This document shows, piece after piece, positions 1 through 21,316 of a stretch of 64,000 bases of DNA. The stretch spans positions 124,001 through 188,000 of the forward strand of contig JALMLS010000525.1 in assembly GCA_038496445.1 (NCBI GenBank), in the 5' to 3' direction. A model generated the notes under the pieces. That model was not told where the DNA came from and made no database searches. It worked only from the letters and a program-made list of their open reading frames with translations. The position numbers and the translations under genes were made by a program. Within the stretch, counting starts at the first letter, position 1; each line of letters opens with the position of its first letter. This stretch comes from Trichosphaerium sp. ATCC 40318 (taxonomy: Eukaryota; Protista; Tubulinea).

Positions 1-2077
1 GTGTTGATTCTATCTCCGCGTTTTATAACCTTATCAATTGTTGCAATTTGTTGCCAATCAAATTCGAAGAAATCAGCTAAATACAAATTCAATAAGCATG
101 AAACAAACTCCAAAAAAACCACGTTACCTCTGCTGAGTATTCCAAGGTATTCGTCACCACGGTGATGTGTACTCCACATTTGAGATCCAACTAGACAGAA
201 TGTTGATAAATAAAGATAAAGTACTAAAAGAAGAAACCAACAAAGTTGATCTTACCTTCATGCATGTGCTAAACGTTGGGAAAAACATTAGTTGAAAACA
301 GCAATTTGTAGAGTTGTTTTTTTTTGTAGCTTACCAAAAAATCAGCAAACACGTGAATATCATGAGGCCAGTTCTTTGTACATTCCGAAGGACAATCGAG
401 CTCATACTCGAAATACTTTTGCTTAGGTGGAATTGGTGATAATGCAGCACCAAAGTCACCAAGTGTAACCATTGCTTTTGAAAAATAAGTTTGAAGATTT
501 TATAAGTTAATCATTTGGTTTCCCTTACCTGCGTCGTATTTGCGCTTTTCTGGCGTATAATGTATTCTTACTCCTGAATTATCGATCATATCAGGTGTCA
601 ACTTTCTATTATCGTAATGAACCTTATGTCAGAGTTAGCAGAGTGCTGTTAAAGTCAGGTATGTGAGTTGTTGTCAAAGTTAAAAATCAACCAAAAAACG
701 TTACACGAAACAAGGTCTTAGATGCATACCTCAAGTATCACATGTGTAGCTGCGTGAGGGTCTTTTGTACCCATCAAGAAACCAGCTTCTGGCGGTACAT
801 AAAGTGAACCCTAAAAAAGAAATGAGAAAAATCGAGTTAAAGATGTTCTGTACTCCGCCAACTGCCCACGCAAACATAAGTTGAGTGCATCCTGAATCAA
901 GATCTCCTAGAGGCGAACTGCATCTTTGGGCTTTTGTATACTTTTGCCAGTAACTAGTTGGCTCACACAAGTGCACTAAGAAGTGATGTACAATCCCTTC
1001 CGATGACTATAGAAAAGTAAACAAAAGTCGCGCGGGTAAAAGATTGTCCGTTACCTTTTGTACTATAGGATCAATCCTGATAATATGTGCCTCTGATACT
1101 TCTAAAAAACCAGGTAAGTACAATTACCTAAGCGTATTATTTGTTAAGTGATTACCTGGAAGTACAAGTGACTGACACATGTACGTTGTTATTTTATCGC
1201 TTGGAATAGTTACACCAGGCATTGTCATCTCGTAAGTTGATACATTAGGATCTGTATCATTCCAAGGCGTAGGTTCTCCCCAGAAAGAAACAACTGTAGA
1301 TCCGCGATGATCAGAATCAGAAGGGTGCTTATAGCGAATATCGTTAGAAGGCCCTATACCCCAAATAACTCTTTTGTTTTGGACAAACAAAAGTTAGCTT
1401 CCCACGTAAAATCACGTGATATTTTTTAATGACAAACCTGTTTTCTCCTTCAACAAGCTTTCTATCTTGTGTATCGCCTGTATCAAATTTACGCTTTACA
1501 TGAAAGGTAGTGTAGCCATCACCTCTTTCAAGAAAAAATTAGTGTAAATTCAAACAACAAACAAAAAAGTATGTGACTGCGTACTGTTCACCTCCTACGA
1601 GTTCCCAGTCTTGGCATTTATCTATTACAGGCTCAGAAAACGTTAACGCATGTCTATCAGTTATTTGAGGTTCTCCGTTTGGTCCAAAGTTAAGCATAAT
1701 GATATCAGCACCTAATGTAACTCATTAATTAGGCATCTAACCAAGCAAGCCTTTTTCTTATTCTCAAAATTACAAGGGTAACCCTATTCTGTTTTTTATA
1801 GTCACGTGCCTGGCATTGCACCTGTAGTGAACTCAGCAACACCTAAGAGAAGTTAGTTTGTGACATTTCAAACAAAAAAACTCTCACCAAAGCCAACCCA
1901 TGCGTCCTCTTCATGTGCCCTCACTGCCATGTTAATTTCTTCATTTTCCAAGTCTACATTCCAGAAAACTTCGAATCTATCCAATTGTAGTTCCTGTCTG
2001 TGGTCGTATTCTCCAGGAGAGAAAGCAACACATAACGTAGCTAATAATACGAGGAGGTACAGCCCTCTCATGCTCAT
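1..2077 (-). CDS. DOMON-domain copper type II ascorbate-dependent monooxygenase (DBH/MOXD1-like), multi-exon, 3' end runs off window
   Basis: Signal peptide MSMRGLYLLVLLATLCVAFS; DOMON motifs WVGFG...MPGADII; TTYMCQ, HHFLVHLC, FAWAVGG, GVRIHYT and PH-type Cu2 monooxygenase segments across exons. Confidence 0.85.
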
Positions 2078-2139
2078 CTTGCTTATTTTGGTTTAAGTGT
2101 CGCAAATAGGCAATTGCTGCTAAAACTGTCAGTAGCCAC

Positions 2140-2521
2140 ATGGCACCTTGTACTACGCCGGCTGCGTAATTAAACTGATTTTTCCGGAAGATGAAAAGAA
2201 GGGTATTCCCTCTCGCCGCCTACCATTTCCCCGAGTAGAAACATTGCCAGCTGGCGCTCAAGAGCTACACTACGGGTATTTCAGAAACAAAGGCATCACA
2301 AAACCTTTCAAGTATGTATTTAAAAATCACCTGCTAGTAAATCTTGCAGTTGTAAATACCTAATGCCATTCACTAAACAAGAAAAAACAGAAAAAAAAAA
2401 GAATGCAAAACACAGAACTTTGTTCGTTCATAGCATAATACTGATTCGAATGCCAAAAGTGACAAGTGTTGGTATTGATTCTTTGAAAGACATTGCCCGT
2501 ATTGAGATAATTATAAAGTAA
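2140..2521 (+). CDS. Possible small hypothetical protein (~86 aa, 2 exons); needs a 1-nt correction just after the ATG
   Basis: ORF 2148-2363 reads naturally up to a GTATGT donor; the TTCATAG acceptor near 2433 continues in frame to TAA 2519-2521; the ATG at 2140 is out of frame by one base. Confidence 0.3.
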
Positions 2522-2600
2522 TATGTGATATAAAATAAAGGTATAGAATATCACGGGATACTTGTCAGTTTCATTTGACATAATTATCTGATAGTCGGGT

Positions 2601-5497
<2,897 letters not shown>

Positions 5498-5799
5498 TTG
5501 TAGTGCTTTTTGTGGAAGCCAAAACTAACTTAACTGTGGTACTAAAATGGCAGCCGAAGAATCTATCTTTCGAAACTGTGCTTCGTGTGGTTCAGGGTGT
5601 TTATATCAAAAATGGAACCAAAAAAAACCCGATAGCAATCATCATTTGAGGACTGATGCCATTCCTTACCCAACGGTCTCCTTTCCCTCAACTATAGAAT
5701 GCTTTCAATAAAATTGAAACTAATCCAAGACTGCCAGTAATACTTGCTGTCTACTCTCTAAGCCAACTACTTACTTGTAACCTTACTTGCCCTTGTATT

Positions 5800-6618
5800 T
5801 TATACATTATCTTTTGTGCTCACCGTGCATTCTTTGCTCATTGATAAATGAAGTGTGCTCTTTTAATTTACCATTTCTGTACCATTCCTGTTTTTATACT
5901 CTCACGAATCGGCTGTTTGACCAATGTGTGCCACTGTACTGCTGACTAGTAAACGCACTGATCGCTGTTTGCAAGTAAGTTACACCTTATTATATTCGCT
6001 AGCGCTGTACGACGTCGTACATCGCTGCTTAACTCTTTATCTTCATCAGCTTTTGCAACCTCAGTACCTTCTTCCTTTAATTCTTCTTTTGACTCTTTTG
6101 TATCTGCTTTGTCTTCTTTACCCTCTCCATCTTCTTTAGCTTCTGTATCAGCTTTTTCATCCTTTTTAGGGGTCTTCCCACGGTATCATCAATTTCAATT
6201 TCGCCGTTTTGTGTCTTTTCAAGAAGCTCATCTGCTGCGCTATCTGGTTGACCTGTTTCTGTGCTCCAATCTGTTTCCAAATCTACAAACCAAAGTGAGT
6301 AAAATAATAAACGAAGCAGACCTAGGTATGCAGATAAATTACTCAAAGCGTCAGCGAAAAATTCATCAGTATGTCTGTGACGTACTACACGTACAGGTTC
6401 TCTACCGTATCTTTCAGCCTCTTAGTACCATTCCCAATCGTTTACACAAACATTTAACTGTACATATAATTTTGCTATGGAGTAAGCTACTCAGTAGTAC
6501 CAAAGAAACAAAGAGTCAATGCTAAGAGGTACATATCATTCAGCTAGCTGAAAGTAGTTTATTACGTAGTTTTTTCCAGTTTACACAGAAATTCAGATGC
6601 AACAGTAACAGAAAACAT
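5800..6618 (-). CDS. Hypothetical protein with a Glu/Lys-rich region; apparent frameshift near 6165-6180; termini uncertain
   Basis: Exon reads LETDWSTETGQPDSAADELLEKTQNGEIEIDDTV, then in another frame PKKDEKADTEAKEDGEGKEDKADTKESKEELKEEG; GT-AG introns flank it. Confidence 0.45.
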
Positions 6619-6929
6619 GTCTACAACAAGCATTGCGATTCGCGAAAGCGAAGTTTTGATGTTTTTGTTTTAAACGCTCCGAAAAAAAAAAGTTACGACT
6701 TGAATTACAAAAGGAATGCGACGTTTCGTTGCACGGTTTTTTCTTTTTCGAGTTAACATAGGTAAATCCTTGTACAACGAATGTTTTTTAAACATATGTT
6801 TCCTTAAATACTGCATTTAAAACCTAAAAACGGCATTTTTATTCATTTGCAAAAGAAACCAGCATTCCAAGCATCATGTCCTTTGTATTGGAGAAAAAAC
6901 GCCGTACAACTGAAAAGTTCATTGTAAAG

Positions 6930-7316
6930 ATGTTGACGCCAAGAAGTAGAAGACGTACAGCTTCAGCGCCGCCAAAAATTACAAAAAAGAACTCATCACC
7001 GTCTTTACCACCTAAATCAGCAAGAAAGTCATCTAGAAAGGCGTCAGATAGTATAGTTGAGTCAGAAGCGATTGTAGACGGTAAAAAATCAGCGCGTAGA
7101 CAGTCACGTAAACGATCAAAATCAGAAAAGATTTACTATCAACCAGAACAAATAGGCAAAGGGTAAGTAAACGCACTTGTTAAAAAACAAAGTTTCCTTT
7201 TTTAGATCTTTTTGTTTTAACTTCTTTTTAGCAAATGCCGCATCAATTATCACAGAAGTAACTCTGGGATCTCTTATATAAACAGTAGACCGTATATACG
7301 AAGAGGATGTATTTAA
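6930..7316 (+). CDS. Small basic Ser/Arg/Lys-rich hypothetical protein, 2 exons
   Basis: ORF MLTPRSRRRTASAPPK...; GTAAGT donor at 7163, TTTAG acceptor, in-frame TAA at 7314-7316. Confidence 0.5.
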
Positions 7317-7539
7317 AAAAAAAGATAGCTACGCGCGTAACGCTTTACGTGGTTCTTGCTTTCTCTCTCCCTCCCTTCCCTCCTCTCAACTTGTACTTTT
7401 GTTAAACTATCTGCCTACAGAAAAAGCTGTTGTAGCATTGTAAATAACAACCAGCTCATTTCAAGAAATAAAAAACGCGAAAGCGGTTTTCTTCTCTACT
7501 CGAAGTTCCTTGAGTGTCATCAGCATCTAACCACTTCTC

Positions 7540-8355
7540 TTAACAATAGAGTTGTAATAGAACACCCAGAGTACGTGATCCATCACCCAGAGGTCTCAAA
7601 GAAAGAGAGAACTCATAAATATCTTCCCAAATCATAGACGCGGATCTGTGAGGTTTTGGCATCGCTGCTAGTCGCTTTTGTAGAGCCTCCAGCTTCCCTT
7701 TTTGTCTACCCAGCCGTTCCTTCTCCTCCGCACTACGTTCTTCATCGTCAAAGAATGTTCCTAAAAGACTTTGAGCTGCACTTGCTTCATTCTCACCCTC
7801 TTCGCTCCAAATGTTCGTAAAGATCTGTTTACACACTTCATCTATCGGTGCAGAGAAGTAAAGACCTGACATAGTGGACTCACAAGCCCATCCAGGTAAT
7901 GCCTCTTCCTCTATATCTTTAACCATCTTCTTTAATACGCGTGTATCCTCGAAGATTTGTTTAAAATCGTGCGTGAGCGAGCAGCATTGTTTACACGGCT
8001 CGGATTTGACGCCAATGGTACCACACGGGTACAAACAATGGTCTATGAAAGTGAATGGCACTTGTCCTTCTTCTTCCGGTTCGTCAGAGTTATCAACCCC
8101 GAAATCATAGCCGTACTCTTCTTTAAAACTTTGTCTGAACCCTATTTGCTCATTTCTGCATTTTGCCGCCCAAAACAGGTTTGTTTTCTTAGAACTTGCT
8201 TTACATACCAACCGTAGCGCTAAAACGCTATCAGCACTCTCCATTTCGTCTACATCATCATCTAGAAGGATGTGTCGCTGAATTACGATCCATGGCACTT
8301 CATACAGCTGTTCTGAGGTCATAGGACTCGTATCGTTACGTTTTCGTTTCTCCAT
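7540..8355 (-). CDS. Intronless 271-aa hypothetical protein with a weak F-box-like N-terminus
   Basis: Uninterrupted ORF; LYEVPWIVIQRHIL...VLALRLVCK...W resembles F-box spacing. Confidence 0.7.
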   Translation of the reverse strand: MEKRKRNDTSPMTSEQLYEVPWIVIQRHILLDDDVDEMESADSVLALRLVCKASSKKTNLFWAAKCRNEQIGFRQSFKEEYGYDFGVDNSDEPEEEGQVPFTFIDHCLYPCGTIGVKSEPCKQCCSLTHDFKQIFEDTRVLKKMVKDIEEEALPGWACESTMSGLYFSAPIDEVCKQIFTNIWSEEGENEASAAQSLLGTFFDDEERSAEEKERLGRQKGKLEALQKRLAAMPKPHRSASMIWEDIYEFSLSLRPLGDGSRTLGVLLQLYC

Positions 8356-8505
8356 AAAGAAATACGATCAGTTGGGTGGTTGTAAGGCAGAAAACCAGAA
8401 CGAAAATGGACAGAAGAAAATTCAAACATTTTCCTTTTTTGACTCAAAAAGTTTTTCGCTTTGATTGTCGGCAAAATAAACAATCCTTCATTTGTTTTGG
8501 ATCTA

Positions 8506-11500
8506 ATGGATACAAACATACTATTGCTGTTTATCATAGGGTTATCTTGCGCGTATTCATTGGTACAACTGAACTCTTTCCATTTTATCTCAACCGCCAT
8601 TTTAGAATGAGTTTGGAGACCCTAGTGTCACTCAAATAGACCCATGGGGAACAGATTCATTGCGTATACGCATAACAGTTAGCGGTGCACCTAAAAACTT
8701 GGCTGTACAAGTACGTTTCCGCTCCCAAATCATGCTCTAAATGACATTAAAGGCGTTACTTCCTAACCCACCGAAAAATACAAAGTAAGTACTGCGAGGC
8801 GTCGAAACGCTCTTAATCATTCTGTATAGAGGGGAAATTTACAACACCCCGCTGTACACATCAAACGGAAATATAGCTGCTTCAGTTGAAGATGGCAAAC
8901 TCGTGGTAACACGTTTATCTGATAAAAAGGTACAAAAATCGAAAATAAACTGTTAGATCACGTGACCTTCTTTTTTTTTTCTTTGGTGGTGATTTCTGTT
9001 CACAGGTTTTGTTACAAGAAAGCGGTCACTCGTTTGGTACCTCATTTAGTGCAGAAGGGACCACGAAAGCATCTATATCTTTTGAACCTCAAGATGAAGT
9101 GCGTTGGAACTTTTATTTTTCTGAAAGGTTTTTCGCTTTTTCGTAGTGACTTTCGAGAAAGGATATTTATGGTTTGGGTGAACACAGAACAGGCAAACTA
9201 CAAAATAAACCGTACACACATAGTTTTCAAAGGAGTCAAATTTACTCCTACTCAATTGGTGGAGACATAAGTATTCCTTTTTATCAATCATCTGCTGGAT
9301 ACGGATTTTTATGGCAAGTATTAGAATATTCCTCTTTCGACCTACCCTCATACTTCACTTCTCATTCTCGCGCTTAGGAACTTACCTTCTTTTGGATCTG
9401 TGTCTATACTAGCAAACGGGACGTCGTGGGTATCAAATGCTGCTACCCAACTTGGTACGAAATAACAAGCGAAATTGCAAAAACAATTAATTTCTTTTAA
9501 AGATTTCTGGGTTACCACAACATCTTCAAGCGATCTTGACTACGCTGAAATTATGCATAACTATGTGGACGCGACAGGCCACCCTCCACCTATGCCGTTC
9601 CATGCATCAGGTAATAATCTTGAGGACTTTAGGTTCTAAAAAGCTACAAAAGGGTTTTGGCAATGTAAGAACAGATATCGAAACGAAACTGAATTGTTAA
9701 GTATAGCCAACGGCTATTATACAAGGTACCTAACTTTATACATCACCAAGCATGTATTTAATAACAAATTCAAGGAATTTACCTCTGAGTGTTATTGTTG
9801 TGGACTACTACAACTGGTAAGCATAACGTGTTGTTGTAGTGTTTTCATAAAAAAAATAGGGTTAATTTTGGAGACTGGGCGTTCAACCCTGCGTGCTGGC
9901 AGACTCCAGCAAACATGGTCAGCAACCTAAATGGTCATGGTACCGAGATTATGGTACGTATACTTGTTTTTTTCCTATGTGTCAACGAAGAGAATATTCT
10001 AGGTTTCCGTGTGGCCAAACATTGTTAAAGAAAGTCATAACTTTAAAGCGATGTATGATAATGGGTATGTACTCACCCTCAACTTAATGATTTGGTTCTT
10101 AGTTTTTACTTATTTGTGTATTAGATACCTTGTAATGAACTCGAGTGGTACACCATATCCTTTCAGGGCGGCTGGTCGTTATACTTATGATCCTTTCAAT
10201 CCCGATGCAAGAAAGTACGCTTGCTATTAGATTCCACTTTTTTTCTTTTTTTTGGTTTTGCTGTTTTTGTACAATCTAATTTTGTTGTAGAGTACGTTGT
10301 TGTTGAAGCTAGAATGAGTTCGTTCTGAAGTATTTTGATTAGTTCGTTTGGGATCAAGTTAAGAAAGGTTATTATGACAATGGTGTAAAGATGTACTGGT
10401 TAGATGCAGATGAACCAGAGCGTCAACTGCCCGATACAAGGTGAGACTATTTATTGCACATGCCACAACTAATATCATTAAGTGGTCAATGGTACTACGC
10501 CGCTGGTCAGGATGAACAAGTCGGTAAAGATTCTTAAAAAATTATGTAGCACCTATTGACTAAGTGTTGTAGGTATGGCGTATCCTCTATTACATCAACA
10601 GACGGTAAGATTTTTATAAGATTCGAAGAATATTTCAAAGAAAAAAAAAGTTTTCATGACATCCACAGAAAGAAATGTTTTGCCATCTAACAACTTAAGT
10701 TCTACGATGGATTAAAAGCTGAAGGAGAAGACGTGGTGTTACTGAGCAGAAGCGCATGGGCTGGTAAGATATAAAAGCTGTTTTCTTTTGAAAAAAGAAG
10801 ATTGTGTCTCATTTTGTGCAGGTAGTCAACGTTACGGAGCTGCAGTGTGGAGTGGTGACATTTCTTCTACGTTTGCAGAACTTGCTATTCAGGTTAGAGT
10901 GGCACAAAACGTTGCAATGTCAGGTACAATTTCTCATAACTCTGTTTCTTTCTAATTTTTTTTTTAGGATTGTACTGGTGGACCACTGATATCGGTGGTT
11001 ACAAGGTTATCTTTATTTACATTTGTTAGAAGTAGATATTAAATACTGCTATAGGATGGTAACATCAACGATGCAACTTTTCAAGAGTTGATCGTGAGAT
11101 GGTACAGTTTAAATGTCGTTCACTTTTTTTTTGTATTTACAATTTATCAAAAGGTTCCAATTTGGCGCTTTCTGTCCACTGGTACACGATTGACCCCAAT
11201 ACTTGTCTTTCCTAAAACATGTATTAGTTCAGAACCCACGGACATAGAAGCCCTTCGGACCCTAACAGCGCTTGCGGTAGTTCTGGAGGTCCAAATGAGG
11301 TATTTTTATTTTGGTTTTGTTCGAATAAGTTTAATGTTTGCTCAGGTTTGGCGCTTTGGTGATACCGCTTATAATGTTATTTCAAAAATTATATTGCTCA
11401 GAGAGCAATTGAGAGACTATATCATGAAACACGTGCGCATTTCTAACAAAAGTTTGGTAACTAACCTTTTTTTTGTTTAGATGCAAATTGCTTCCGAGAT

Positions 11501-11945
11501 AGGTACTCCTATAGTTCGTCCGATGTTCTGGGAGTTCCCAAACGACCCTTGCGCATCAGCAGATGATCAATACATGTTCGGTCCAGACTGGCTAGTCGCA
11601 CCTGGTACAAAAAATAAGCAAACATCTTGATTTACTAACAATGCACAGTTTTGGAGTACCAGGCCAAGAGTAGGCAAGTTTGCTTACCTGTGCTGCCTAA
11701 AGGATATACATGGGTACGGAGAACTTTGTAGAGTTTTGACTTTAATTATTTATTAGGTCCATCACTACACCCAGAAGGCTTTTGGACCTGGAAAGCAAAC
11801 AATGTACAGTCGACATTTTTTTTTTTTTCACCTTTTTTGGAATACCCAACAATTTTAGTTATCAAAATTGCGCTAACTTGTAGTTTTTTTTTTTAGTCCT
11901 ACACCTATAGATGAATTTCCACTATTCTACTTGAACGCAGAATGA
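8506..11945 (+). CDS. Glycoside hydrolase family 31 (alpha-xylosidase/alpha-glucosidase-like), secreted, ~27 introns
   Basis: Signal peptide; GFWQCKNRY, VVDYYNW, nucleophile motif YWLDADEPE, WSGDI acid/base motif, WWTTDIGG, FRTHG, DQYMFGPDWLVAP. Confidence 0.95.
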
Positions 11946-12309
11946 TTTAAGTGTCAAATAAAGCACCGTTGAACCCAGTTTTTGCAAATTTACTTCAAAA
12001 GTTCACGTGGCAAAGACATTCATCTACACGCTCGCAAAAAGTACTATTACTGCGTCGATAGCGATATCAAGTCGTACACATAACTTTTCTCCGTTTTTCG
12101 GGTTATACACGTCATAGAGCGACAAAACCACGTTAAATAGTATCTCTACGCGTGGAATACGCGTAGGGGTTGGTTTTAGAAGTTCTTGAGAACCAACCGT
12201 TTTAAGCTTATGTGCGGAGGAACAAAAATCCGAAACCTTGTTGTCGCCAAATTAAGCAAATTTCAACGACAACAGCAATAAACGTACCCCCAAAACTTCC
12301 CAAAAGTTT

Positions 12310-15300
12310 ATGAGCATAATACAGGACGCAATGGAACACCCTGAAGGCTATTTATACTCAAAAACAGAACAAAAAGGTTCAAAATGGACCAAAAAATACT
12401 TTAAAGTGATAAAACAATGCGTGGTTGCATCTAAAAGCGCCAAAGATGATGGAGAAAAGTGCTTTTGTACTACTTTAAAATATTATTTATAAAACTTCGT
12501 TGTTAACGTTCCGTAGCCTTAGGTGATATCGACAGGCTATCAAAAGGCTCCTCAGCCAGTTTAACACAATCCGAGAACCTATTTTCTTTTACCATTGACA
12601 TATCAAGCAGTACGTGACGTAATAGTGCATAACATAACATTATTAGGCGACACGATCATGTTTCGTGCTCAAGACAAACCAGACTACGATTTATGGTGCG
12701 ACTTCTTTTCTACACACGCTAAGGAGATAGAACTGCCAAAAATACGAGCAACCGCAGCTGTACGAAGTAATTTTAGTAACAAGCACCGAAATGCCAATAT
12801 GTCGCCTTCTCAGATTTTCTGTAATTTAATTAGACGTATTTCTAACGAAGAATACCAAAGGCCGGAGAGATTATGAAACGATTTTCAGATAAAAAAAACG
12901 GCGTTGAAATAAAGAACAGAAAATATAGGCTTAAAACGTACCAGAATTGTTTCCTTGGTAATGAAGCAGTTGATTGGATTATAGAGAACGTAGAAGTATC
13001 AACAAGGTAAAGAACTCAATATTTTCAGAAAAAGGGGAAAACAATTAAACCGAAAAAACTCCCAACCTGAATTACACATCAAAAAAAAAAATTTGTCCCA
13101 GTAGGAGACATCAACAACAAGCAGTGTATTATCTATGCACTGTTTCACTTTTTGGTGGAGGAGAAAACCTACAAATAAGGAAGGAGAATCCAAATTTGTG
13201 GGTCTTTTTTTTTCGGATTTTGTTTGTTTTTTGGGCAGCTACTCTTGATTTTCGGATGTTGTAGCTTATGTGTGTCTATTATAGGGAAGAAGCAGTAGAT
13301 CTAGGTGGTAGATTAATGTCTTCTGGATTTGTCAGACACACTACAGATGATCATTTATTCAAAGATGAAGGTCTATTCTACACATTGGAAAATACAGATG
13401 CAACTGCTTCAAGAGTCGTTGTTTTAGGAGGAGGTATTGCTGGTGCAACTGTAGCAAAGGTGATTATATTTACCGAAATCATGTGCGCTATATTTATACT
13501 ATTCTAGGTCTTAGAAAAGAACTCCAAAGTCGAAGTTACACTTATCGATGGCAAGGATTACTTTGAACTGACACCTGCTGTTCTTCGAGCTATTACACAA
13601 CCTGGTATCACTGAGGCTGTTACTTTCATTAAATCGATAGTTACCAAGCATACACAATACTTGACTAGATCAAAAGTCATCAAAGGATTCGCTTCTGTAA
13701 GTGATTGCTAGCAAAAACAATTTGTAAATTAATGCCATTCTAGATTGTTACACCAGACAAAGTTATTCTAAAGAATGATGTTACTGTACCTTTTGATTAC
13801 TTGGTTATATGTACTGGAACTAGTTATGGATCAAGAATCAAGGATAACGATATGACCACTGATTTTAGGCACGTGCCTTTTGCTGAGCGAATTAAACAGA
13901 TTTCTAACTACTTTTGTTTCAGAGTCAAAGATCTAAGTGACGAAGCAATGGATTTAAAAGAAGCTACAAGCGTTTTGATTGTAGGAGGGGGTGTTGTTGG
14001 TACAGAATTAGCTGGGTATGTATAGTATTAGCTCTTGGTACGTATTGTTAACTGGTTTTAACAACAGAGAAATTATCAACGCTTATCCGAAGAAAAAAGT
14101 TGATTTGGTACAACGTCAACCAAGTTTACTTGGTCGCATGAACAAAAAGACACAAAGGGCTGCATTGAAGTACTTGACAAGCAAGGTAATAACAAAAAAT
14201 TTACTACTAAACATGTCAACGTGCTCACCAAAAGTATTTAGGGTGTCAATGTTACTTTGAATGAAACTGTTGAAACGCAATGCACCGTTGACAATTGTTA
14301 CAAGCTCATCTATTCTGGAAAGCAAATAACTGCTGATAAAGTATTCTTTTGTACAGGACCTAAAGCAGTCACACCATTTATGAAGGAACACTTTAAAAAG
14401 CGTATTGATAAGCACGGGTTCATAGAGGTAAAGCCAACTTTAAGCCATTGTTTGCTTAAGTTAACTTTTTTTGAAGGTTAACAAGTACCTTCAAATCCCT
14501 GGTCATAGTAATATTTTCTGTGCTGGCGATTGTGCTCAACTTAAGGAAGAGAAGACAGCAGAACGTGCAACTGCCCATGCAGAGTTTGTTGCTTCCCAAA
14601 TTCGTCGGTTGATCAATTCAAAAGATCTAAAAAAAGGATACAAATCACCATCAAGACCTGCGTTCATGGTCGTCAGTCTCGGTCCTAAAAACGGCCTTTT
14701 GGTATCTGGGAACTCGTATGTACTACCCTCAAGTTAACTGGTAACTTACATAACGAAATAGGTTGGTCAGCACAGGATCAGTACCTGCCCGTCTTAAAAA
14801 GCTTGGCTTTAACATTTTACAAAAACAAATCAAAAAACAAAATTCTGGTGTAGGAACACCAAGAAGAAGTAATTACTCAAACCTTCTTGCTATGGATACA
14901 GATGAAGTAATTTGTCGTGACTGGAAAGTCTGTCCTCAGAAACTTGCTGTCTTCGGTGCAGATACAATCATTGGAAACAGAGTTGTAGTATCATTGAATG
15001 CAAAAGGAGTTGCATGCAGAGTTACAGTGCCAAAACTTTTTGGTAAGTCTTTTTCTTTTTTGTTTGTCTTGTTGGTGGCACTCACTTACTTGTTACTCAA
15101 TAGGTCGTATTAAGGGTGTTAAAGAGAAAAATATAAGTAGAGTTGAAGTTGAGTGGGATAATGATAGGAGCGTTGACACTGCGCTTGAAGGTATCTAATT
15201 TTGTTAAAGTGATTTAAAAGTTGTTTACTTTTTTCTATTAGATGTTCAAATTATGCTCATGTGCTTGAGTCTTTCTGACCAATCTGAACAACATATGATC

Positions 15301-16141
15301 AAATTATGTGAAGCTATAACACGTGCTCGCATTCGTGGAGTAATAAAACATGTTGTGTGCACCTTTGAGGCATCTTTGAACCTTGAAGAACGAGATGATG
15401 ATCGAGCAAAACAGCTTAAGAAATGCAAAAAAATGTTGATAGATACTGGTATCAATACAACTTTTGTCAGTTGTGTACGTCTTACCTACTATGTTTATTG
15501 TTCTAATACCTAGCTCTAGGCTATTTTCTACGATTATATAGCACAAAACTGCGCTGACAGTGTCCGTGGTACTAAGAAGAAAACATTCAATATGCCTTTA
15601 GGACCACATCGTTATGCTTGGGTATGTTTTCGCTTTTGTATATAACTTTCGCTTACTGTCATCTCAAGGTATCTAGTTTTGATGTAGGAGAAGCTTTAAG
15701 TACTATAATGCTGGATAACGAGAATCACATTGGTGAGGAGTACGGCTTAACAAGTCGTGCTCTGTTGTCTGGTCAACAAATTGCAGAAATCTTGGCAAAA
15801 ATCAGTACGTTCTGAGACATCATGACTTTAGTCATAACTCACAATCTTGTTATTAGCTAGCAAGAATATAAAGTATAAGCCTGGAAAGTACGAAGATGCT
15901 CAACGCTATTATGAGACAAATCTTGGTTGTAGCAGTGATATTGCAAGAGTTTTTGTAGACTTATTTTTTGGAAAAGATGGTATGAAAGATCTTGCCTTTT
16001 GTGTTATTTTATTAAACTTCTATTGTAGGTAAGGGTATAAAATACACACCAAAGGTTAAGAAAGGGTTATCTATGCTACTTGAAAATGAACCAATGTCGT
16101 TTGAACAATGGTCTAACAAAAACGCACATTTATTTGCCTAA
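12310..16141 (+). CDS. Multidomain PH + DEP + AIFM2/FSP1-like FAD/NAD(P)H oxidoreductase + NmrA-like Rossmann protein
   Basis: PH (EGYLYSK...WTKKYF...FRAQDKPDYDLW); DEP (GVEIKNRKYRLKTYQNCFLGNEAVDW...HLFKDEGLFY); VVVLGGGIAG, FDYLVICTG, IVGGGVVGTELAGE, NIFCAGD; KLAVFGADTIIG...VSSFDVGE...LSGQQIAEIL...MSFEQW. Confidence 0.88.
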
Positions 16142-16414
16142 AAAGTGGTATTTGTTCACGTGAAAAAAAAAAAAGAATTGTAAAAAATCAACGCATAAAA
16201 ACGTTTCGTATATCAACAGTTTACTTTTATACAATCACAATGGTTTCAAGTATTCACACACAAACTTTTACGAACACATGCAATCAACATACATTAGAGA
16301 AGGGGTTGCATTTTTTTTTGGTGGTAATTTTTTTTTGCGTTTTAGCACAGAACGAGTTTGACTTTTATTAATAGTGAGTTGCAACTAAAAGTAGGCTAGA
16401 AGCTGGTAGTCCAT

Positions 16415-18577
16415 ATGGGTAATGGCAGGTCTTCGTCTCAGACGTATACAAATCGGGCTTCTCCGTGCGTGTAATTCCATTGTGTACATATTTAATAACG
16501 AACGCCATAAGCTACCCAGGCGCTAATACAAATGGCCGACGCGTTGCTCCGCTGTATGCGCCTTCATATCCGCATAATGTACAAAAATAACACCAAACAG
16601 TTATAATAATCAAGTATAGATGCCGAATAATCAACGTGGACCGAATGTACCGCATAATAGGCCACCTACAGCTACAAATCAAAACCAAATGTCAAACAGT
16701 TACTCTAGTTACCCCAGACAGCAACAAAACCCTTATGCGCCAGTACGAACTTGAAAGCAATAAAGAAAATAAAAAACAAAACTAAGACGAGCTTTAGGGT
16801 ATGTACGCTCAATATCCAGGCCAACCATACGCTTCACAGGCGCAAGGCGCGTACGTATCTTTAAAAAACGTTAAAACTGAACGATATACCACCAAACACG
16901 CTTGAAACGCCTAAGCATCATCTTATTTCGATTCGTAGATATCCAGGACAAACGCAAAATAACTTTGGACCTAATTACGCAACGAATGCACCTCCTGTCG
17001 CCACTGTACCGCAATATTTTAACGTGTGGATGGCTGTAGAAGTAAGTATTAGTAATTTTGCGTGGAAAGTTTTTTCCGTTTTTCTTCCTTCTGGAGTGTC
17101 AGGTTCACTAAATTTTTATTTTTAAGAGTGGTAATATATCTTCATTGGATAATTGGTTAGCTGCTGGTAATCCAGTTGATATTGCAAGGTGAGTAATTGA
17201 GTAAAAAATAAAAGAAGACAGAAACCAGAAAAAAAAATAAATTTATGTTAACATTTTTTACTTAGTCCAGCAAATGGTCACACACCTCTACATTGTGCTG
17301 CTAGTACGTTCATATACTTACTAAATATATATATTGTTTAGTGCCTAATTTTAAAATGAAGAGGTTGGTAACTATGACATTACAATGAGGCTAATTAAAG
17401 GGTATGTTTTTTTTTGTCAAAAAGATCCTTCGCGTTCACCGCTTTCTTTGTCTCTATGATTCTTAATATACGAGCCAGCGCCTTAATTTTATTCAATAGG
17501 AATGCAAATGTTAATGCCCGAGCAAAGGATGGAGCTACACCACTTATACTAGCTGTATGCTTAAAACAAATATGAAAATGATAATTTTTTACACCCATTG
17601 ATTAGATACGATACAAACACGATAATATTGTCCGACTTCTTGGTGAACATGGCGCAAAAGTTAATATGAAAGATGCACAGGTAAAAATAAAATACAAACA
17701 GAATGAATAATCACGTGATAATCAACACATGAACTCACAAAACCACAACTATTTTTTTATCAATTTTCTGTTTGGAAGAAAAGTACTGACATAAAATGAA
17801 GGGTCATGATGCGCTATGGTGGATTAATGTCACTGGACAAGATAACCTTGCTGAATTCTTAAAAGATATCGTACGTCTAGTTTATTATCATTATACCATG
17901 CCGTGACTCACCCGTTTTTAATCAGATGCTTATTCAACAACATGCTGTAATGTCAAAATCTCCAAACTTATCGGCGTCACCACCTGTACATACATTTTCG
18001 CCGAACGCTTTGAACGTATTATCATCAAGTCCTTCGGGAAAGAAAATTGGTAGTGAGGATGTAGAAGATAAGAGTAAGAGTGACGAAACTCCGGAAGAAG
18101 ATAATGAAGAAGGAGAAAAACATCAGCCAAAGAAAAAAGGGAGTGCAAAAAAAGAAGAACTTTCTGAACAGCAGCGACGAGACATCGCTATTAAATGGCT
18201 TGCTACGTTTATGGATGAAGATTTTACATGTCCTATATGCTTAGAACTATTATATAAACCAATAACGGTTGTATGCGGTCACACGTACGTATCTTCTCAA
18301 AACAATAGTTACATTATTTATTTTCATTCACCAACCGAAATCTCTTCACCACAACCTCGTATCTTATTGATTTTATCCTAGATTCTGCAGACAATGTTTG
18401 GATTCATGTTGGGCAGGTGAAAAAGTAGCATGTATATGCCCTCTATGCCGTGCACCTTCGGGAGTTCAAACAACAAAAAAATTATCAGATAACTTTATTT
18501 TGTCAACTATACTTCAAAAAATAGTACCAGAAGAGTACACCAGAAGAGCAAAACAATGTGATCCTTCGGTGACTTAG
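16415..18577 (+). CDS. Ankyrin-repeat + C3HC4 RING finger protein (putative E3 ligase), possible N-myristoylation
   Basis: MGNGRS start; GHTPLHCAA and DGATPLILA ankyrin repeats; [25 protein letters not shown]...CPLCR RING; 5' exon structure approximate. Confidence 0.85.
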
Positions 18578-18876: not shown

Positions 18877-21316
18877 ATGAACAACCTATTAGGTTTGATA
18901 GCCCTACTCTTTGTAGGCATTGCTTGCGCAGCTATTGCTTTACCAAAAGCAAACACAGACCGCAGTTATGTCGAAACACACCTCCCAAGACGTTTAGACC
19001 TAGGTACGACACGGATACCTAATAATCACGTGTTTTTAAGCGACATTAACCGTTAATCAACAAAAATAGGCTGGACATACCACAGCAAGGCTGATTTGTC
19101 TCAAACACGTACATTTATCATTGCAGTTGAAAGACAAAACACAGATAAATTAGAGCAACTTTTCTGGTACGTAGAAAAAGGTGGTGAACTTACAAACAGA
19201 AACTTTATTGGGAACCCAAAAAAAAAAGAAAAAAAAGAAAACTACCGCGAAAAAGTTTTCCCGACACTCCGCTTCAGGCTTTCACTAACCTATTTACTCC
19301 AAGGGAAATCACTGACCCAAAATCGCAATACTACGCTCAATATTTGACCATTGATGAGCTTACAGCTCTCATTGCTCCAAAGCAATCTTCTCTTGATGCT
19401 GTACACAACTTCTTGGCTTCTAATGGTATCTCCGACTACCACGTGACAAAGAACAAGGATTATTTCACCTTTAAGACAACACTACAACATGCCAGAACAA
19501 TGTTTGATACAGAGTTTCATACCTTCAAACATGACGACTCTGGAAAGACCTACACAAGTTCACTTGGTCCATACACACTCCCATCAAGCATCGCATCCGT
19601 TGTTGACTTCGTTGGCGGTATTGTAGGGTACGTACTTAGTCTGCTTAATCGGTTTTGGAGCTGTAGAAGTGCTCTTTTCTTTTTTCTTGGAGTTAAAACT
19701 GTTGCTTTAGTTTGCCTCTACTCAAGAAATTGAGCCTCAAGAAGAGCGATCTCACATTCCAACTTGGTCCAAAAGATCTTCGTAAGCGTTACAACGTAAC
19801 TATGGTCGGTGGTCAAGCCTCAAGCAACGCTCAATCTGTTGCTGAATTCCAAGTACTTTTTTTATCATTTCTTGGTTGGCAATCAATGGTAAACTAATTT
19901 ATTCTCAAAAAAATAGGGACAATACTACTCTGTATCTGACTTGAAACAATTCTTCCAACAATACCAATCCGAATACTCTCAATATGACACTGTCACAAAA
20001 GTATACGGCACAAACGATCCTAATTCTCCAGGTACTTTTGTCAAGTTTTTTCTACTTTTTTTGTGGGTCACGTGCTTATTATGAAAAAAAGGTACTGAAG
20101 CTGAATTGGATATCCAATACATCATGGGTGTAGCACCAAAGGTTCCAACTTGGTTCTGGAGTAATCCAAATCAAGATTTCTGGAGCGATATCACTGGTAA
20201 GTCAAATACGAAAAAGGTAAAAAAATTAATGTTTATTTCGTTTAGCTTGGCTCTCACAAATGGACGATGAACCAAATAACCCATTCGGTACGTTAATAAA
20301 TACCACTTACTGGTAGCAATAAATTTTTGACCGCGTTTAGTTCACTCCATCAGCTACGGTGTACAAGGATCATACCCTAGCGCAACTTACAGACAAAACA
20401 CAAACACCGCTTTCCAAAAACTCGGTTCACGTGGTATCTCAATAATCTTCGCATCTGGTGATTCTGGAACAGGTACGCAGTACAAACTACACTCACGTAG
20501 TCTAACTTTCTCTTAGGATGTAACTTGTGCTTCTACTTCGAGCCTAGCTTCCCAGGTATGGAAAAAAACAGAAAAAACAACTCTAACTTTCTGTCATAGC
20601 TACTTCACCTTATGTCACTTCCGTTGGCGCTACTCGCTTCCTTGGTAACGGTGTTGGACCAGAAGGCGCTGTAGAAGCTTTCAGTACGATATTTTTGTTT
20701 TTGGTTTTTTTTATATCACGTGATCCTCTGTTTTAATAAACATTGTAGGCTCTGGCGGTGGTTTTTCATGGTTATTTGATATCCCAGATTACCAAGCTTC
20801 AGCTGTCTCTAACTTCTTCTCAACATCAACAAAATTACCTTCATCTGGATACTACAACGCTAAAGGACGTGGTACACCTGATGTAGCTGCTATGGGTATC
20901 GGATTCTCCGTAGTAGTATCAGGATCAACTACAAGGTAGAAATAACCGTGAAGTTAATCAGTTTTTCTCATTTTTTTTTAAATAGTGTTGGTGGAACTTC
21001 TGCTTCCTCTCCTACTTTTGCCGGTATTGTTTCTCTTCTTAACGAAGTTCAATTACTTGCTGGAAAGAAACAACTTGGATTCTTGAACCCATGGTTGTAC
21101 CAAGTACGTCTCAGAAGCTTAAAGTAAATACCAAAAAACCCTTACTTACAATATTTTTAGACTTCCGCTGCTCACGGTGATGCTTTCTTTGATGTCACTG
21201 AAGGAAGCAATGCTCAAGGATGTTGTGGTGAAGGTTTCTCATGCCAAGTTGGCTGGGATCCTGTAACTGGTCTTGGAACTCCAAACTTCGATCGTCTCAA
21301 GAATTACTTGCCTTGA
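18877..21316 (+). CDS. TPP1: Tripeptidyl-peptidase 1-like sedolisin (peptidase S53) with prodomain
   Basis: Signal peptide; [54 protein letters not shown]. Confidence 0.95.

What the first reader, a model, noticed from the sequence alone, without database searches (positions are those of the whole stretch)
12310..16141. PH-DEP-AIFM2/FSP1-NmrA four-domain fusion: a signal-recruited membrane oxidoreductase
Seen: PH (~12340-12710), DEP (~12870-13385), an AIFM2/AMID-type oxidoreductase with both GxG dinucleotide motifs (~13410-14810), and an NmrA-like Rossmann domain with a degenerate glycine loop GADTIIG (~14935-16141). The DEP-oxidoreductase and oxidoreductase-NmrA junctions each lie within one exon, so those fusions are not splice-model artefacts. 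Established: animal FSP1 reaches membranes by myristoylation and reduces CoQ; PH and DEP domains bind phosphoinositides and receptors; NmrA domains sense NAD(P) redox state. Inference: a regulated, lipid-targeted quinone reductase with a built-in redox sensor, for example at phagosomes. I do not know of this architecture being described.
Basis: partly seen in the sequence, partly recalled or inferred. Interest (0 to 1): 0.72.

Follow-up and report, generated by a model that had tools for sequence, protein, structure and literature searches.

The report
PH-DEP-FSP1-like-NmrA-like fusion enzyme gene
This is one real, spliced and expressed gene, probably from an amoeba, that joins two membrane/signal-targeting domains (PH, DEP) to an apparently intact FSP1-type quinone reductase and a cofactor-loop-degenerate NmrA-like domain; relatives exist unnamed in other amoebae, and its function is still only inferred.

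Summary
An 18-exon gene on the + strand (12310-16141, 902 aa) has all 17 introns confirmed by spliced cDNA contigs from two studies. These include the junctions PH to DEP, DEP to oxidoreductase (inside exon 5) and oxidoreductase to C-terminal domain (inside exon 11). No single contig spans the whole gene.

- DEP is solid.
- The flavoenzyme is FSP1/AIFM2-type with intact FAD and NAD(P)H loops, the conserved Glu and the GD motif.
- PH is probable but below threshold, because it is split over three exons.
- The C-terminal domain is NmrA-like only by transitive homology. Its exons match, in order, a tail family whose profile hits NmrA-like proteins.
- That domain's glycine loop (GADTIIG) is degenerate, as in all seven aligned relatives, so an NAD(P) "redox sensor" is not supported.

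The combination is not unique. The FSP1-like plus NmrA-like core, and DEP-FSP1-like fusions, recur in Amoebozoa, also joined to RGS, RasGAP or kinase domains. One metagenome protein is DEP-FSP1-like-NmrA. Earlier unchecked notes of this scan report paralogues on other DNA of this genome. I found no paper on the architecture.

Best reading: a PH/DEP-recruited NAD(P)H:quinone reductase, function inferred.

The parts
12310..16141 (+). Whole coding region, 18 exons, 902 aa. Exons: 12310-12466, 12517-12609, 12647-12759, 12861-13006, 13285-13459, 13508-13696, 13744-13868, 13923-14015, 14068-14185, 14242-14427, 14477-14715, 14762-15042, 15104-15190, 15242-15474, 15520-15621, 15669-15804, 15857-15979, 16029-16141.
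   Evidence: Open-frame GT-AG model. All introns seen as joints or pieces in spliced cDNA contigs.
12340..12729 (+). Probable PH domain, split over exons 1-3. The signature Trp of the C-terminal helix lies at 12694-12696.
   Evidence: Pfam PH 0.016, profile 4-36, on exon 1. Atlas features 0.92 with 170 shared, PH clusters. PLEKHA6 PH at E=1. Sequence pattern read directly.
12900..13384 (+). DEP domain, interrupted by the 278-nt intron 13007-13284.
   Evidence: Pfam DEP 5.3e-13 (profile 1-35) and 1.8e-6 (profile 37-71). A local DEP profile built from amoebozoan relatives gives 2e-16 and 5e-7.
13409..14837 (+). FSP1/AIFM2-like flavoprotein: FAD domain, NAD(P)H domain and FSP1-type C-terminal hairpin and helix.
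   Evidence: Pyr_redox_2 colinear on exons 7, 9 and 10. PDB AIFM2/FSP1 9e-10. Family profile matches exons 5-11 in order.
13427..13444 (+). FAD-binding loop GGGIAG.
   Evidence: Read from the exon 5 translation. Aligned with the family's GGGFAG.
13869..13922 (+).
   Evidence: Joint 13866>13921 with 2 ambiguous letters in X2 and X3 contigs. Removing it restores the family spacing.
13984..14007 (+). NAD(P)H-binding loop GGGVVG followed by TE. The Glu (14005-14007) corresponds, by alignment position and my inference, to human FSP1 E156.
   Evidence: Role of E156: PMC10516921.
14525..14554 (+). GD motif (AGDCA) and the family-invariant EEK.
14838..14939 (+). Linker between the enzyme and the C-terminal domain. 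It lies inside exon 11.
14940..16138 (+). NmrA-like (atypical SDR) domain, divergent.
   Evidence: hhalign of exons 11, 13, 15, 16 and 17 to tail profile A2, colinear, E 1e-5, 5e-4, 1e-6, 1e-3 and 2e-7. These exons are the top four hits of a local profile over all six-frame fragments of the window. A2 hits NmrA-like structures.
14955..14975 (+). Degenerate glycine loop GADTIIG. The canonical NmrA-like form is GxxGxxG.
   Evidence: The relatives' loops are equally degenerate.
16142..16212 (+). 3' untranslated region. cDNA contigs end at 16154 (X1) and 16212 (X2).
   Evidence: table 8.

Best explanation
One expressed gene encodes a 902-aa cytosolic protein. An FSP1/AIFM2-type NAD(P)H:quinone oxidoreductase with intact cofactor motifs has lost the animal enzyme's N-terminal myristoyl anchor. 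In its place it carries a PH and a DEP domain, which most likely bring it to membranes through acidic lipids, phosphoinositides or receptor tails. There it would reduce membrane quinones such as ubiquinone.

The C-terminal NmrA-like domain is a conserved partner of this enzyme in Amoebozoa. Its dinucleotide loop has decayed, so it more likely acts as a structural, regulatory or partner-binding domain than as a second reductase or a canonical NAD(P) sensor.

Shown: gene structure, transcription, domain identities and motif integrity. Inferred: membrane recruitment, the quinone substrate, and the role of the tail.
For: - Spliced cDNA contigs from two studies confirm all 17 introns and link all four domains through overlaps.
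- DEP scores above Pfam's cut-off.
- The enzyme is closest to AIFM2/FSP1 structures: 9e-10, against NDH-2 at 1e-4.
- GGGIAG, GGGVVG-TE, CTG, AGD and the family EEK are all present.
- The model of relative P0060 best matches human FSP1 (8jsc, 7e-25, TM 0.78 by target).
- The FSP1 paper states that the myristoyl motif and the C-terminal domain serve membrane association and that E156 is needed (PMC10516921).
- The tail family profile hits atypical SDR/NmrA-like structures: 3e48 6e-16, triphenylmethane reductase 1e-11, an NmrA-family regulator 5e-9, YtfG/QOR2 2e-6. The model of the P0060 tail matches SimC7 and HSCARG/NMRAL1.
- The window's exons match that profile colinearly.
- DEP is joined directly to the same enzyme in Balamuthia, Stenamoeba, Vermistella and contig L001. 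This argues for a selected function of the DEP-enzyme pair.
Against: - No activity, cofactor or localisation data exist.
- PH is below Pfam's cut-off (16 bits against 25).
- No single cDNA contig spans the whole gene.
- One cDNA 5' end lies at 14973, inside the tail. It could mark a shorter transcript.
- Several family-invariant residues of the tail (R, G and S of alignment A3) and one Asn of the enzyme are not kept here.
- Relatives fuse the same core to RGS, RasGAP and kinase domains, and some have decayed cofactor loops (P0060 has GGD and GG). This fits a sensing role as well as a catalytic one.
- The joined protein was neither scanned nor folded.
Confidence: 0.55

Rival explanations
1. The FSP1-like plus NmrA-like pair is mainly a sensor module that reads NAD(P)H, quinone or oxidant status. 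The protein would then be a signalling adaptor, with PH and DEP placing the sensor at receptors or G-protein complexes and catalysis secondary.
For: - The same core is fused to signalling output domains in relatives: kinase with or without DEP in Mastigella and Pelomyxa, RGS in Rhizamoeba, Pyxidicula and a Syncephalis fungus, and RasGAP.
- Some members have decayed cofactor loops.
- An earlier scan note describes an RGS paralogue with decayed motifs (unchecked).
Against: - This gene has no output domain besides PH and DEP.
- It keeps every catalytic motif I could check.
- The NmrA-like loop that would sense NAD(P) is degenerate.
Confidence: 0.25
2. The enzyme is a membrane-recruited NAD(P)H oxidase-type producer of H2O2 or superoxide, for example for killing prey, rather than an antioxidant quinone reductase.
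For: - FSP1 itself can produce H2O2 and hydroxylate its FAD in the presence of NAD(P)H and oxygen (PMC10516921).
- Recruitment domains would suit a local oxidative burst.
Against: - There is no specific sequence evidence for this.
- The quinone-side C-terminal hairpin is conserved.
- The idea rests on analogy only.
Confidence: 0.08
3. The four-domain protein is an annotation artefact: two or three neighbouring genes, or a chimeric assembly.
For: - No single cDNA contig spans 12310-16141.
- One cDNA 5' end lies at 14973.
Against: - One contig joins PH, DEP and half of the enzyme. Another joins the other half of the enzyme to the tail and the stop. A third bridges the two. All joints keep one frame.
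- Both domain junctions lie inside single exons.
- Relatives carry the same fusions.
Confidence: 0.04

Closest known systems
Animal FSP1 / AIFM2 (ferroptosis suppressor protein 1; PDB 8jsc, 8wik, 7xpi)
   Same: - Two-Rossmann flavoprotein with FAD and NAD(P)H loops, the conserved Glu after the second loop, the GD motif and an FSP1-type C-terminal hairpin.
- It is the best solved relative of exon 10 and of the model of relative P0060.
   Different: - No N-terminal myristoylation motif; the enzyme sits behind PH and DEP.
- It carries a roughly 400-aa NmrA-like C-terminal extension.
- It has the family-specific EEK motif.
- Activity is untested.
Unnamed amoebozoan FSP1-like plus NmrA-like proteins: P0060 (metagenome), P0009 (Rhizamoeba saxonica), P0012 (Mastigella eilhardi), P0034 (Pelomyxa schiedti KAH3756735.1), P0002, P0008, P0073
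   Same: - The same two-domain core, colinear with the window's exons 5-17.
- P0060 also starts with a DEP half joined directly to the enzyme.
- The glycine loop of the tail is degenerate in all of them.
   Different: - Only 25-50% identical.
- None of those examined shows a PH domain. P0060 is cut at its N-terminus, so it cannot be judged.
- P0012 and P0034 add a kinase.
- This gene lacks some tail residues that are invariant among them.
DEP-FSP1-like proteins without tail: Balamuthia mandrillaris KAL6073310.1 (P0020), Stenamoeba (P0042), Vermistella (P0068); contig L001 of GCA_037189325.1
   Same: DEP is immediately followed by the FAD loop, as in exon 5 here.
   Different: - The three proteins have no NmrA-like domain. 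In L001 the contig ends before the point where one would start.
- No PH domain was seen.
NmrA / HSCARG (NMRAL1) and other atypical SDRs (triphenylmethane reductase, SimC7, E. coli YtfG/QOR2, complex I 39-kDa subunit)
   Same: The fold and the family-level sequence profile of the tail.
   Different: - The window's own exons give no direct Pfam NmrA hit.
- The GxxGxxG loop reads GADTIIG.
- No NAD(P) binding can be assumed.

Membership tests
FSP1/AIFM2-type NAD(P)H:quinone oxidoreductase | N-terminal FAD-binding GxGxxG Rossmann loop | tested here: met
   GGGIAG at 13427-13444, aligned with the family's GGGFAG.
FSP1/AIFM2-type NAD(P)H:quinone oxidoreductase | Second GxGxxG loop for NAD(P)H, with the conserved Glu (human E156) | tested here: met
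   GGGVVGTE at 13984-14007. The Glu is invariant in alignment A3. Its role is described in PMC10516921.
FSP1/AIFM2-type NAD(P)H:quinone oxidoreductase | Characteristic C-terminal domain (hairpin and helix) needed for dimer and quinone site | tested here: inconclusive
   Exon 10 aligns to 7xpi residues 257-326 at 9e-10. The rest aligns only at family level (SLGP...G hairpin and the start of exon 11). Exon 11 alone finds no FSP1 in the PDB.
FSP1/AIFM2-type NAD(P)H:quinone oxidoreductase | N-terminal myristoylation motif | tested here: not met
   The protein starts MSIIQD, and the enzyme begins about 220 residues in.
FSP1/AIFM2-type NAD(P)H:quinone oxidoreductase | FAD content and NAD(P)H:CoQ reductase activity | not testable with these tools
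   Needs recombinant protein.
DEP domain (PF00610) | Match to the Pfam profile above the gathering score over its full length | tested here: met
   Exon 4 scores 49.1 bits (cut-off 32.7) on profile 1-35. Exon 5 scores 28.2 bits on profile 37-71. The two are colinear.
PH domain (PF00169) | Match to the Pfam profile above the gathering score | tested here: inconclusive
   Exon 1 alone scores 16.2 bits against a cut-off of 25.1. Exons 2 and 3 give no hit. Atlas features 0.92 to PH clusters. The conserved Trp is present. The whole domain could not be scored because it is split over three exons.
NmrA-like family (PF05368), atypical SDR | Sequence match to the family profile | tested here: inconclusive
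   No direct Pfam hit on any exon. The link is transitive: exons to tail profile A2; A2 to NmrA-like PDB chains; two of nine A2 members to Pfam NmrA, best 1.9e-19.
NmrA-like family (PF05368), atypical SDR | Glycine-rich dinucleotide loop GxxGxxG (motif from my own knowledge) | tested here: not met
   GADTIIG at 14955-14975. The relatives' loops are equally degenerate.
NmrA-like family (PF05368), atypical SDR | NmrA-like Rossmann fold | tested here: inconclusive
   Shown only for relative P0060's tail: pLDDT 70.7, with best folds SimC7, 3e48 and HSCARG. The window's own product was not folded.

The most novel reading that the evidence does not exclude
The FSP1-like plus NmrA-like pair may be an old amoebozoan module that couples membrane quinone or NAD(P)H redox chemistry to cell signalling, plugged into DEP, PH, RGS, RasGAP, kinase and F-box proteins. 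This gene would be its catalytically intact form, recruited on signal to particular membranes.

Earlier notes on this genome, which I did not check, report a DEP-PH glutathione peroxidase. Together the two would form a signal-recruited defence against lipid peroxidation: a protist counterpart of the animal FSP1 and GPX4 pair that uses domain fusion instead of lipidation.
Probability: 0.2. Interest if true: 0.8.

Novelty: new variant of a known kind. Interest (0 to 1): 0.5.

Why it matters
FSP1 is known from animals as a myristoylated enzyme that protects membranes by reducing quinones. This gene, and the amoebozoan family it belongs to, show the same enzyme type anchored in a different way, through PH and DEP, and permanently paired with an NmrA-like domain. 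In relatives the enzyme type is also wired to RGS or RasGAP domains, and the paired core to kinase domains.

If the enzyme is active and recruited on signal, it would give a tractable non-animal model for how quinone-based membrane protection is targeted. It would also point to a link between redox chemistry and G-protein or lipid signalling.

If it is only a decorated housekeeping reductase, the result is still a clean annotation of an undescribed protein family.

Tried and rejected
- **Word-index protein searches.** I ran three: P0060 whole, alignment A3, and the P0060 tail region. The first two were swamped by NDH-2-like proteins. None recovered any known family member other than the query P0060 itself, and the third found only P0060. 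They give no census and no evidence of absence.
- **The gene's own product in the representative library.** The search with exon 10 found no copy of it; the best hit was 53% identical. I therefore had no stored full-length reference for this protein.
- **Single-exon PDB searches.** Exons 6, 9, 11 and 13 and PH exon 3 gave nothing useful.
- **tblastn of relatives against the window.** It did not pick up the tail exons. Profiles were needed.
- **Other tails.** P0104 (Tieghemostelium) has a low-complexity tail that is not homologous, so I dropped it. The tails of P0003 and P0056 are not recognised by the tail profile.
- **Alternative splice model.** The pair 15808/15861 is rejected by the reads, which show 15804>15857.
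- **Literature.** Four searches found no description of the architecture.
- **Organism.** Run and organism names were coded, so the organism is not identified. 'Amoebozoan' rests only on the sources of the nearest relatives.
- **Joined sequence.** In one search a script joined the exons, only to test that the frame stays open and to count residues. The joined sequence was kept in a scratch file for the exon table; it was not printed and not sent to any tool.
Full report
**What is there**

The region 12310-16141 (+) lies in a compact eukaryotic locus with about 37% G+C and introns of mostly 45-60 nt. A separate spliced transcript starts near 16379 downstream.

I searched for GT-AG pairs that keep one frame open. 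That gave a 17-exon model from ATG 12310 to TAA 16139-16141. An in-frame stop lies 19 codons before the ATG.

**Transcript evidence**

No run is on record as RNA, but three runs hold parts of the stretch. Laid on 12000-16500, their contigs are spliced, and one carries a SMART template-switch oligo, so they are cDNA.
- Fifteen joints are listed, and two more follow from the contig pieces. All agree with my introns within the stated ambiguity.
- One joint (13866>13921, two ambiguous letters) reveals a further GC-AG intron, 13869-13922. It removes 18 codons and restores the spacing seen in relatives. The product is therefore 18 exons and 902 aa.
- X2 record 3 (1312 nt) runs from 12330 through the PH exons, DEP and the first half of the enzyme.
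- X1 record 2 (1590 nt) runs from exon 8 to 16154.
- X3 record 8 bridges 13747-14592.

The fusion thus rests on overlapping contigs from two studies, not on one molecule. X2 record 4 begins at 14973 directly behind the SMART oligo. That is either a truncated cDNA or an internal 5' end.

**Domains, tested exon by exon**

- **DEP.** Clear: exon 4 gives 5.3e-13 on profile 1-35, and exon 5 gives 1.8e-6 on profile 37-71. A 278-nt intron lies inside the domain.
- **DEP-enzyme junction.** Exon 5 continues without a break into VVVLGGGIAGATVAK.
- **Oxidoreductase.** Pyr_redox_2 hits are colinear on exons 7, 9 and 10.
- **Closest solved relatives.** For exon 10 these are AIFM2/FSP1 (7xpi 9.2e-10, human FSP1 4e-7), ahead of bacterial NDH-2 (1.2e-4) and yeast Ndi1 (0.05).
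- **PH.** Only probable: 16 bits on exon 1 against a cut-off of 25, a language-model match of 0.92 to PH clusters, and PLEKHA6 PH domains at E=1. The expected Trp in the last helix is present.
- **NmrA.** No exon gives a Pfam NmrA hit.

**Relatives**

A full HMMER search of 1.84 billion representatives with exon 10 found no copy of this protein (best 53% identity), but it found many longer relatives. Their Pfam scans and sources show the following.

| Protein(s) | Source | Architecture |
|---|---|---|
| P0060 | soil/aquatic metagenome, N-terminally cut | DEP half, Pyr_redox_2, NmrA (8.7e-19) |
| P0002, P0008/P0155, P0073, P0009 | P0009 is Rhizamoeba | Pyr_redox_2 plus a roughly 350-aa tail |
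| P0012, P0034 | Mastigella; Pelomyxa KAH3756735.1 | the same core plus a kinase, and DEP in P0034 |
| P0020, P0042, P0068 | Balamuthia KAL6073310.1; Stenamoeba; Vermistella | DEP-Pyr_redox_2 without tail |
| P0047, P0056, P0157, P0160 | Rhizamoeba; Pyxidicula; unnamed (P0157); Syncephalis (a fungus) | carry RGS |
| P0003 | not named | carries RasGAP |

- The tails are homologous to one another.
- Contig L001 (GCA_037189325.1) encodes DEP joined directly to an enzyme about 50% identical to this one.
- Nearly all named sources are Amoebozoa, so the window is probably amoebozoan. This is an inference.

**The C-terminal domain**

- A profile of nine tails (A2) hits atypical SDR/NmrA-like structures: 3e48 5.6e-16, triphenylmethane reductase 1.2e-11, an NmrA-family regulator 4.7e-9, SimC7, YtfG/QOR2 1.6e-6 and the complex I 39-kDa subunit 3.5e-6.
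- Two of the nine tails reach Pfam NmrA.
- The AlphaFold model of the P0060 tail (pLDDT 70.7) matches SimC7, 3e48, HSCARG/NMRAL1 and triphenylmethane reductase.
- The window's exons 11, 13, 15, 16 and 17 match A2 in order: template 10-92, 145-205, 240-282, 288-322 and 329-356, with E 1.3e-5, 5.3e-4, 1.3e-6, 1.3e-3 and 2e-7.
- In a local profile search over all 2769 six-frame fragments of the window, the four best hits are exactly these exons.
- A profile of the whole core (A3) matches eleven fragments from 13400 to 16135, all on the + strand and in profile order.

So the domain is NmrA-like by transitive homology. The enzyme-tail junction lies inside exon 11.

**Motifs**

The exon-wise alignment to the family shows, in the enzyme: GGGIAG, IDGKDYFE, H..YL, FDYLVICTGTSY, GGGVVGTELAGE, NIFCAGDCA and EEKTAERA, then the SLGP hairpin.
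- The FSP1 structure paper describes FAD and NAD(P)H domains plus a C-terminal domain needed for dimerisation, membrane association and activity. It reports that human E156A is inactive (PMC10516921).
- The Glu is kept here.
- The N-terminus (MSIIQD) has no myristoylation glycine.

In the tail the glycine loop reads GADTIIG, where NmrA-like proteins have GxxGxxG (motif from my own knowledge).
- The seven aligned relatives have GVESQLG, TGDSTIS, LGFSSFT and the like. The loss is therefore family-wide and old.
- Several tail residues that are invariant among relatives (an Arg, a Gly, a Ser) are not kept here.

**How it most likely works**

The steps from motif integrity onward are inferred. The protein is an active FSP1-like NAD(P)H:quinone reductase. 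PH and DEP, both known membrane- and receptor-binding modules, replace the lipid anchor and make its membrane residence conditional.

The tail is a conserved accessory domain that probably does not bind NAD(P) in the canonical way. Its resemblance to quinone-related atypical SDRs (QOR2, the complex I 39-kDa subunit) is noted but not interpreted further.

The main rival is that the core is chiefly a sensor feeding signalling partners. Fusions of the enzyme type to RGS and RasGAP domains, and of the whole core to kinase domains, in relatives, and decayed loops in some members, suggest this. A pro-oxidant role and an annotation artefact are minor rivals.

**Novelty**

I found no paper on this architecture. 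Related proteins exist in public data only under generic or wrong names.

Earlier notes of this scan, unchecked by me, list more fusions on other DNA of the same genome: RGS-RGS-FSP1-NmrA, F-box-DEP-FSP1, DEP-PH-GPx, DEP-MerA-like and globin-PH-DEP. This gene is therefore one member of a lineage-specific expansion, and the scan has met the FSP1-NmrA pair before.

I class it as a new variant of a known kind.

**Limits**

- The structure models are of relative P0060 and of moderate quality (pLDDT 65.9 and 70.7).
- The organism is not identified.

Noticed in passing
window 39556-39689 (-): U4 spliceosomal snRNA gene, Rfam 82.7 bits, full length.
   Followed up: no
window 14973: One cDNA contig (X2 record 4) begins here directly behind a SMART template-switch oligo, inside the codons of the GADTIIG loop. 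It is either a truncated cDNA or an internal transcript start that would give a tail-only product.
   Followed up: partly
window 13869-13922: A GC-AG intron in a gene whose other 16 introns are GT-AG.
   Followed up: yes
window 13667-13776: X3 record 7 reads straight through intron 13697-13743: unspliced RNA or DNA carry-over in that library.
   Followed up: no
window 16379-16800 (+): A separate spliced transcript starts about 230 nt after this gene's stop. The contig's loose end at 16464 matches window text near 16520, which implies another short intron. The ORF pieces are rich in Q, N and P.
   Followed up: no
L001 1-1572 (NCBI GCA_037189325.1, JBBCKK010030312.1): A genomic contig of another eukaryote (47% G+C) encodes DEP followed directly by the same FSP1-like enzyme, about 50% identical. 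The DEP there has no intron, and the contig ends before any tail.
   Followed up: partly
P0160 (Syncephalis fuscata, 1080 aa): A zoopagomycete fungus has an RGS domain in front of a Pyr_redox_2 enzyme of the same type, so signalling fusions of this enzyme are not confined to Amoebozoa.
   Followed up: no
window 17926-18381 and 19344-19733 (+): By eye only: an ORF with a RING-like CPICLE...C.H motif, and an ORF that resembles a sedolisin/kumamolisin pro-domain.
   Followed up: no
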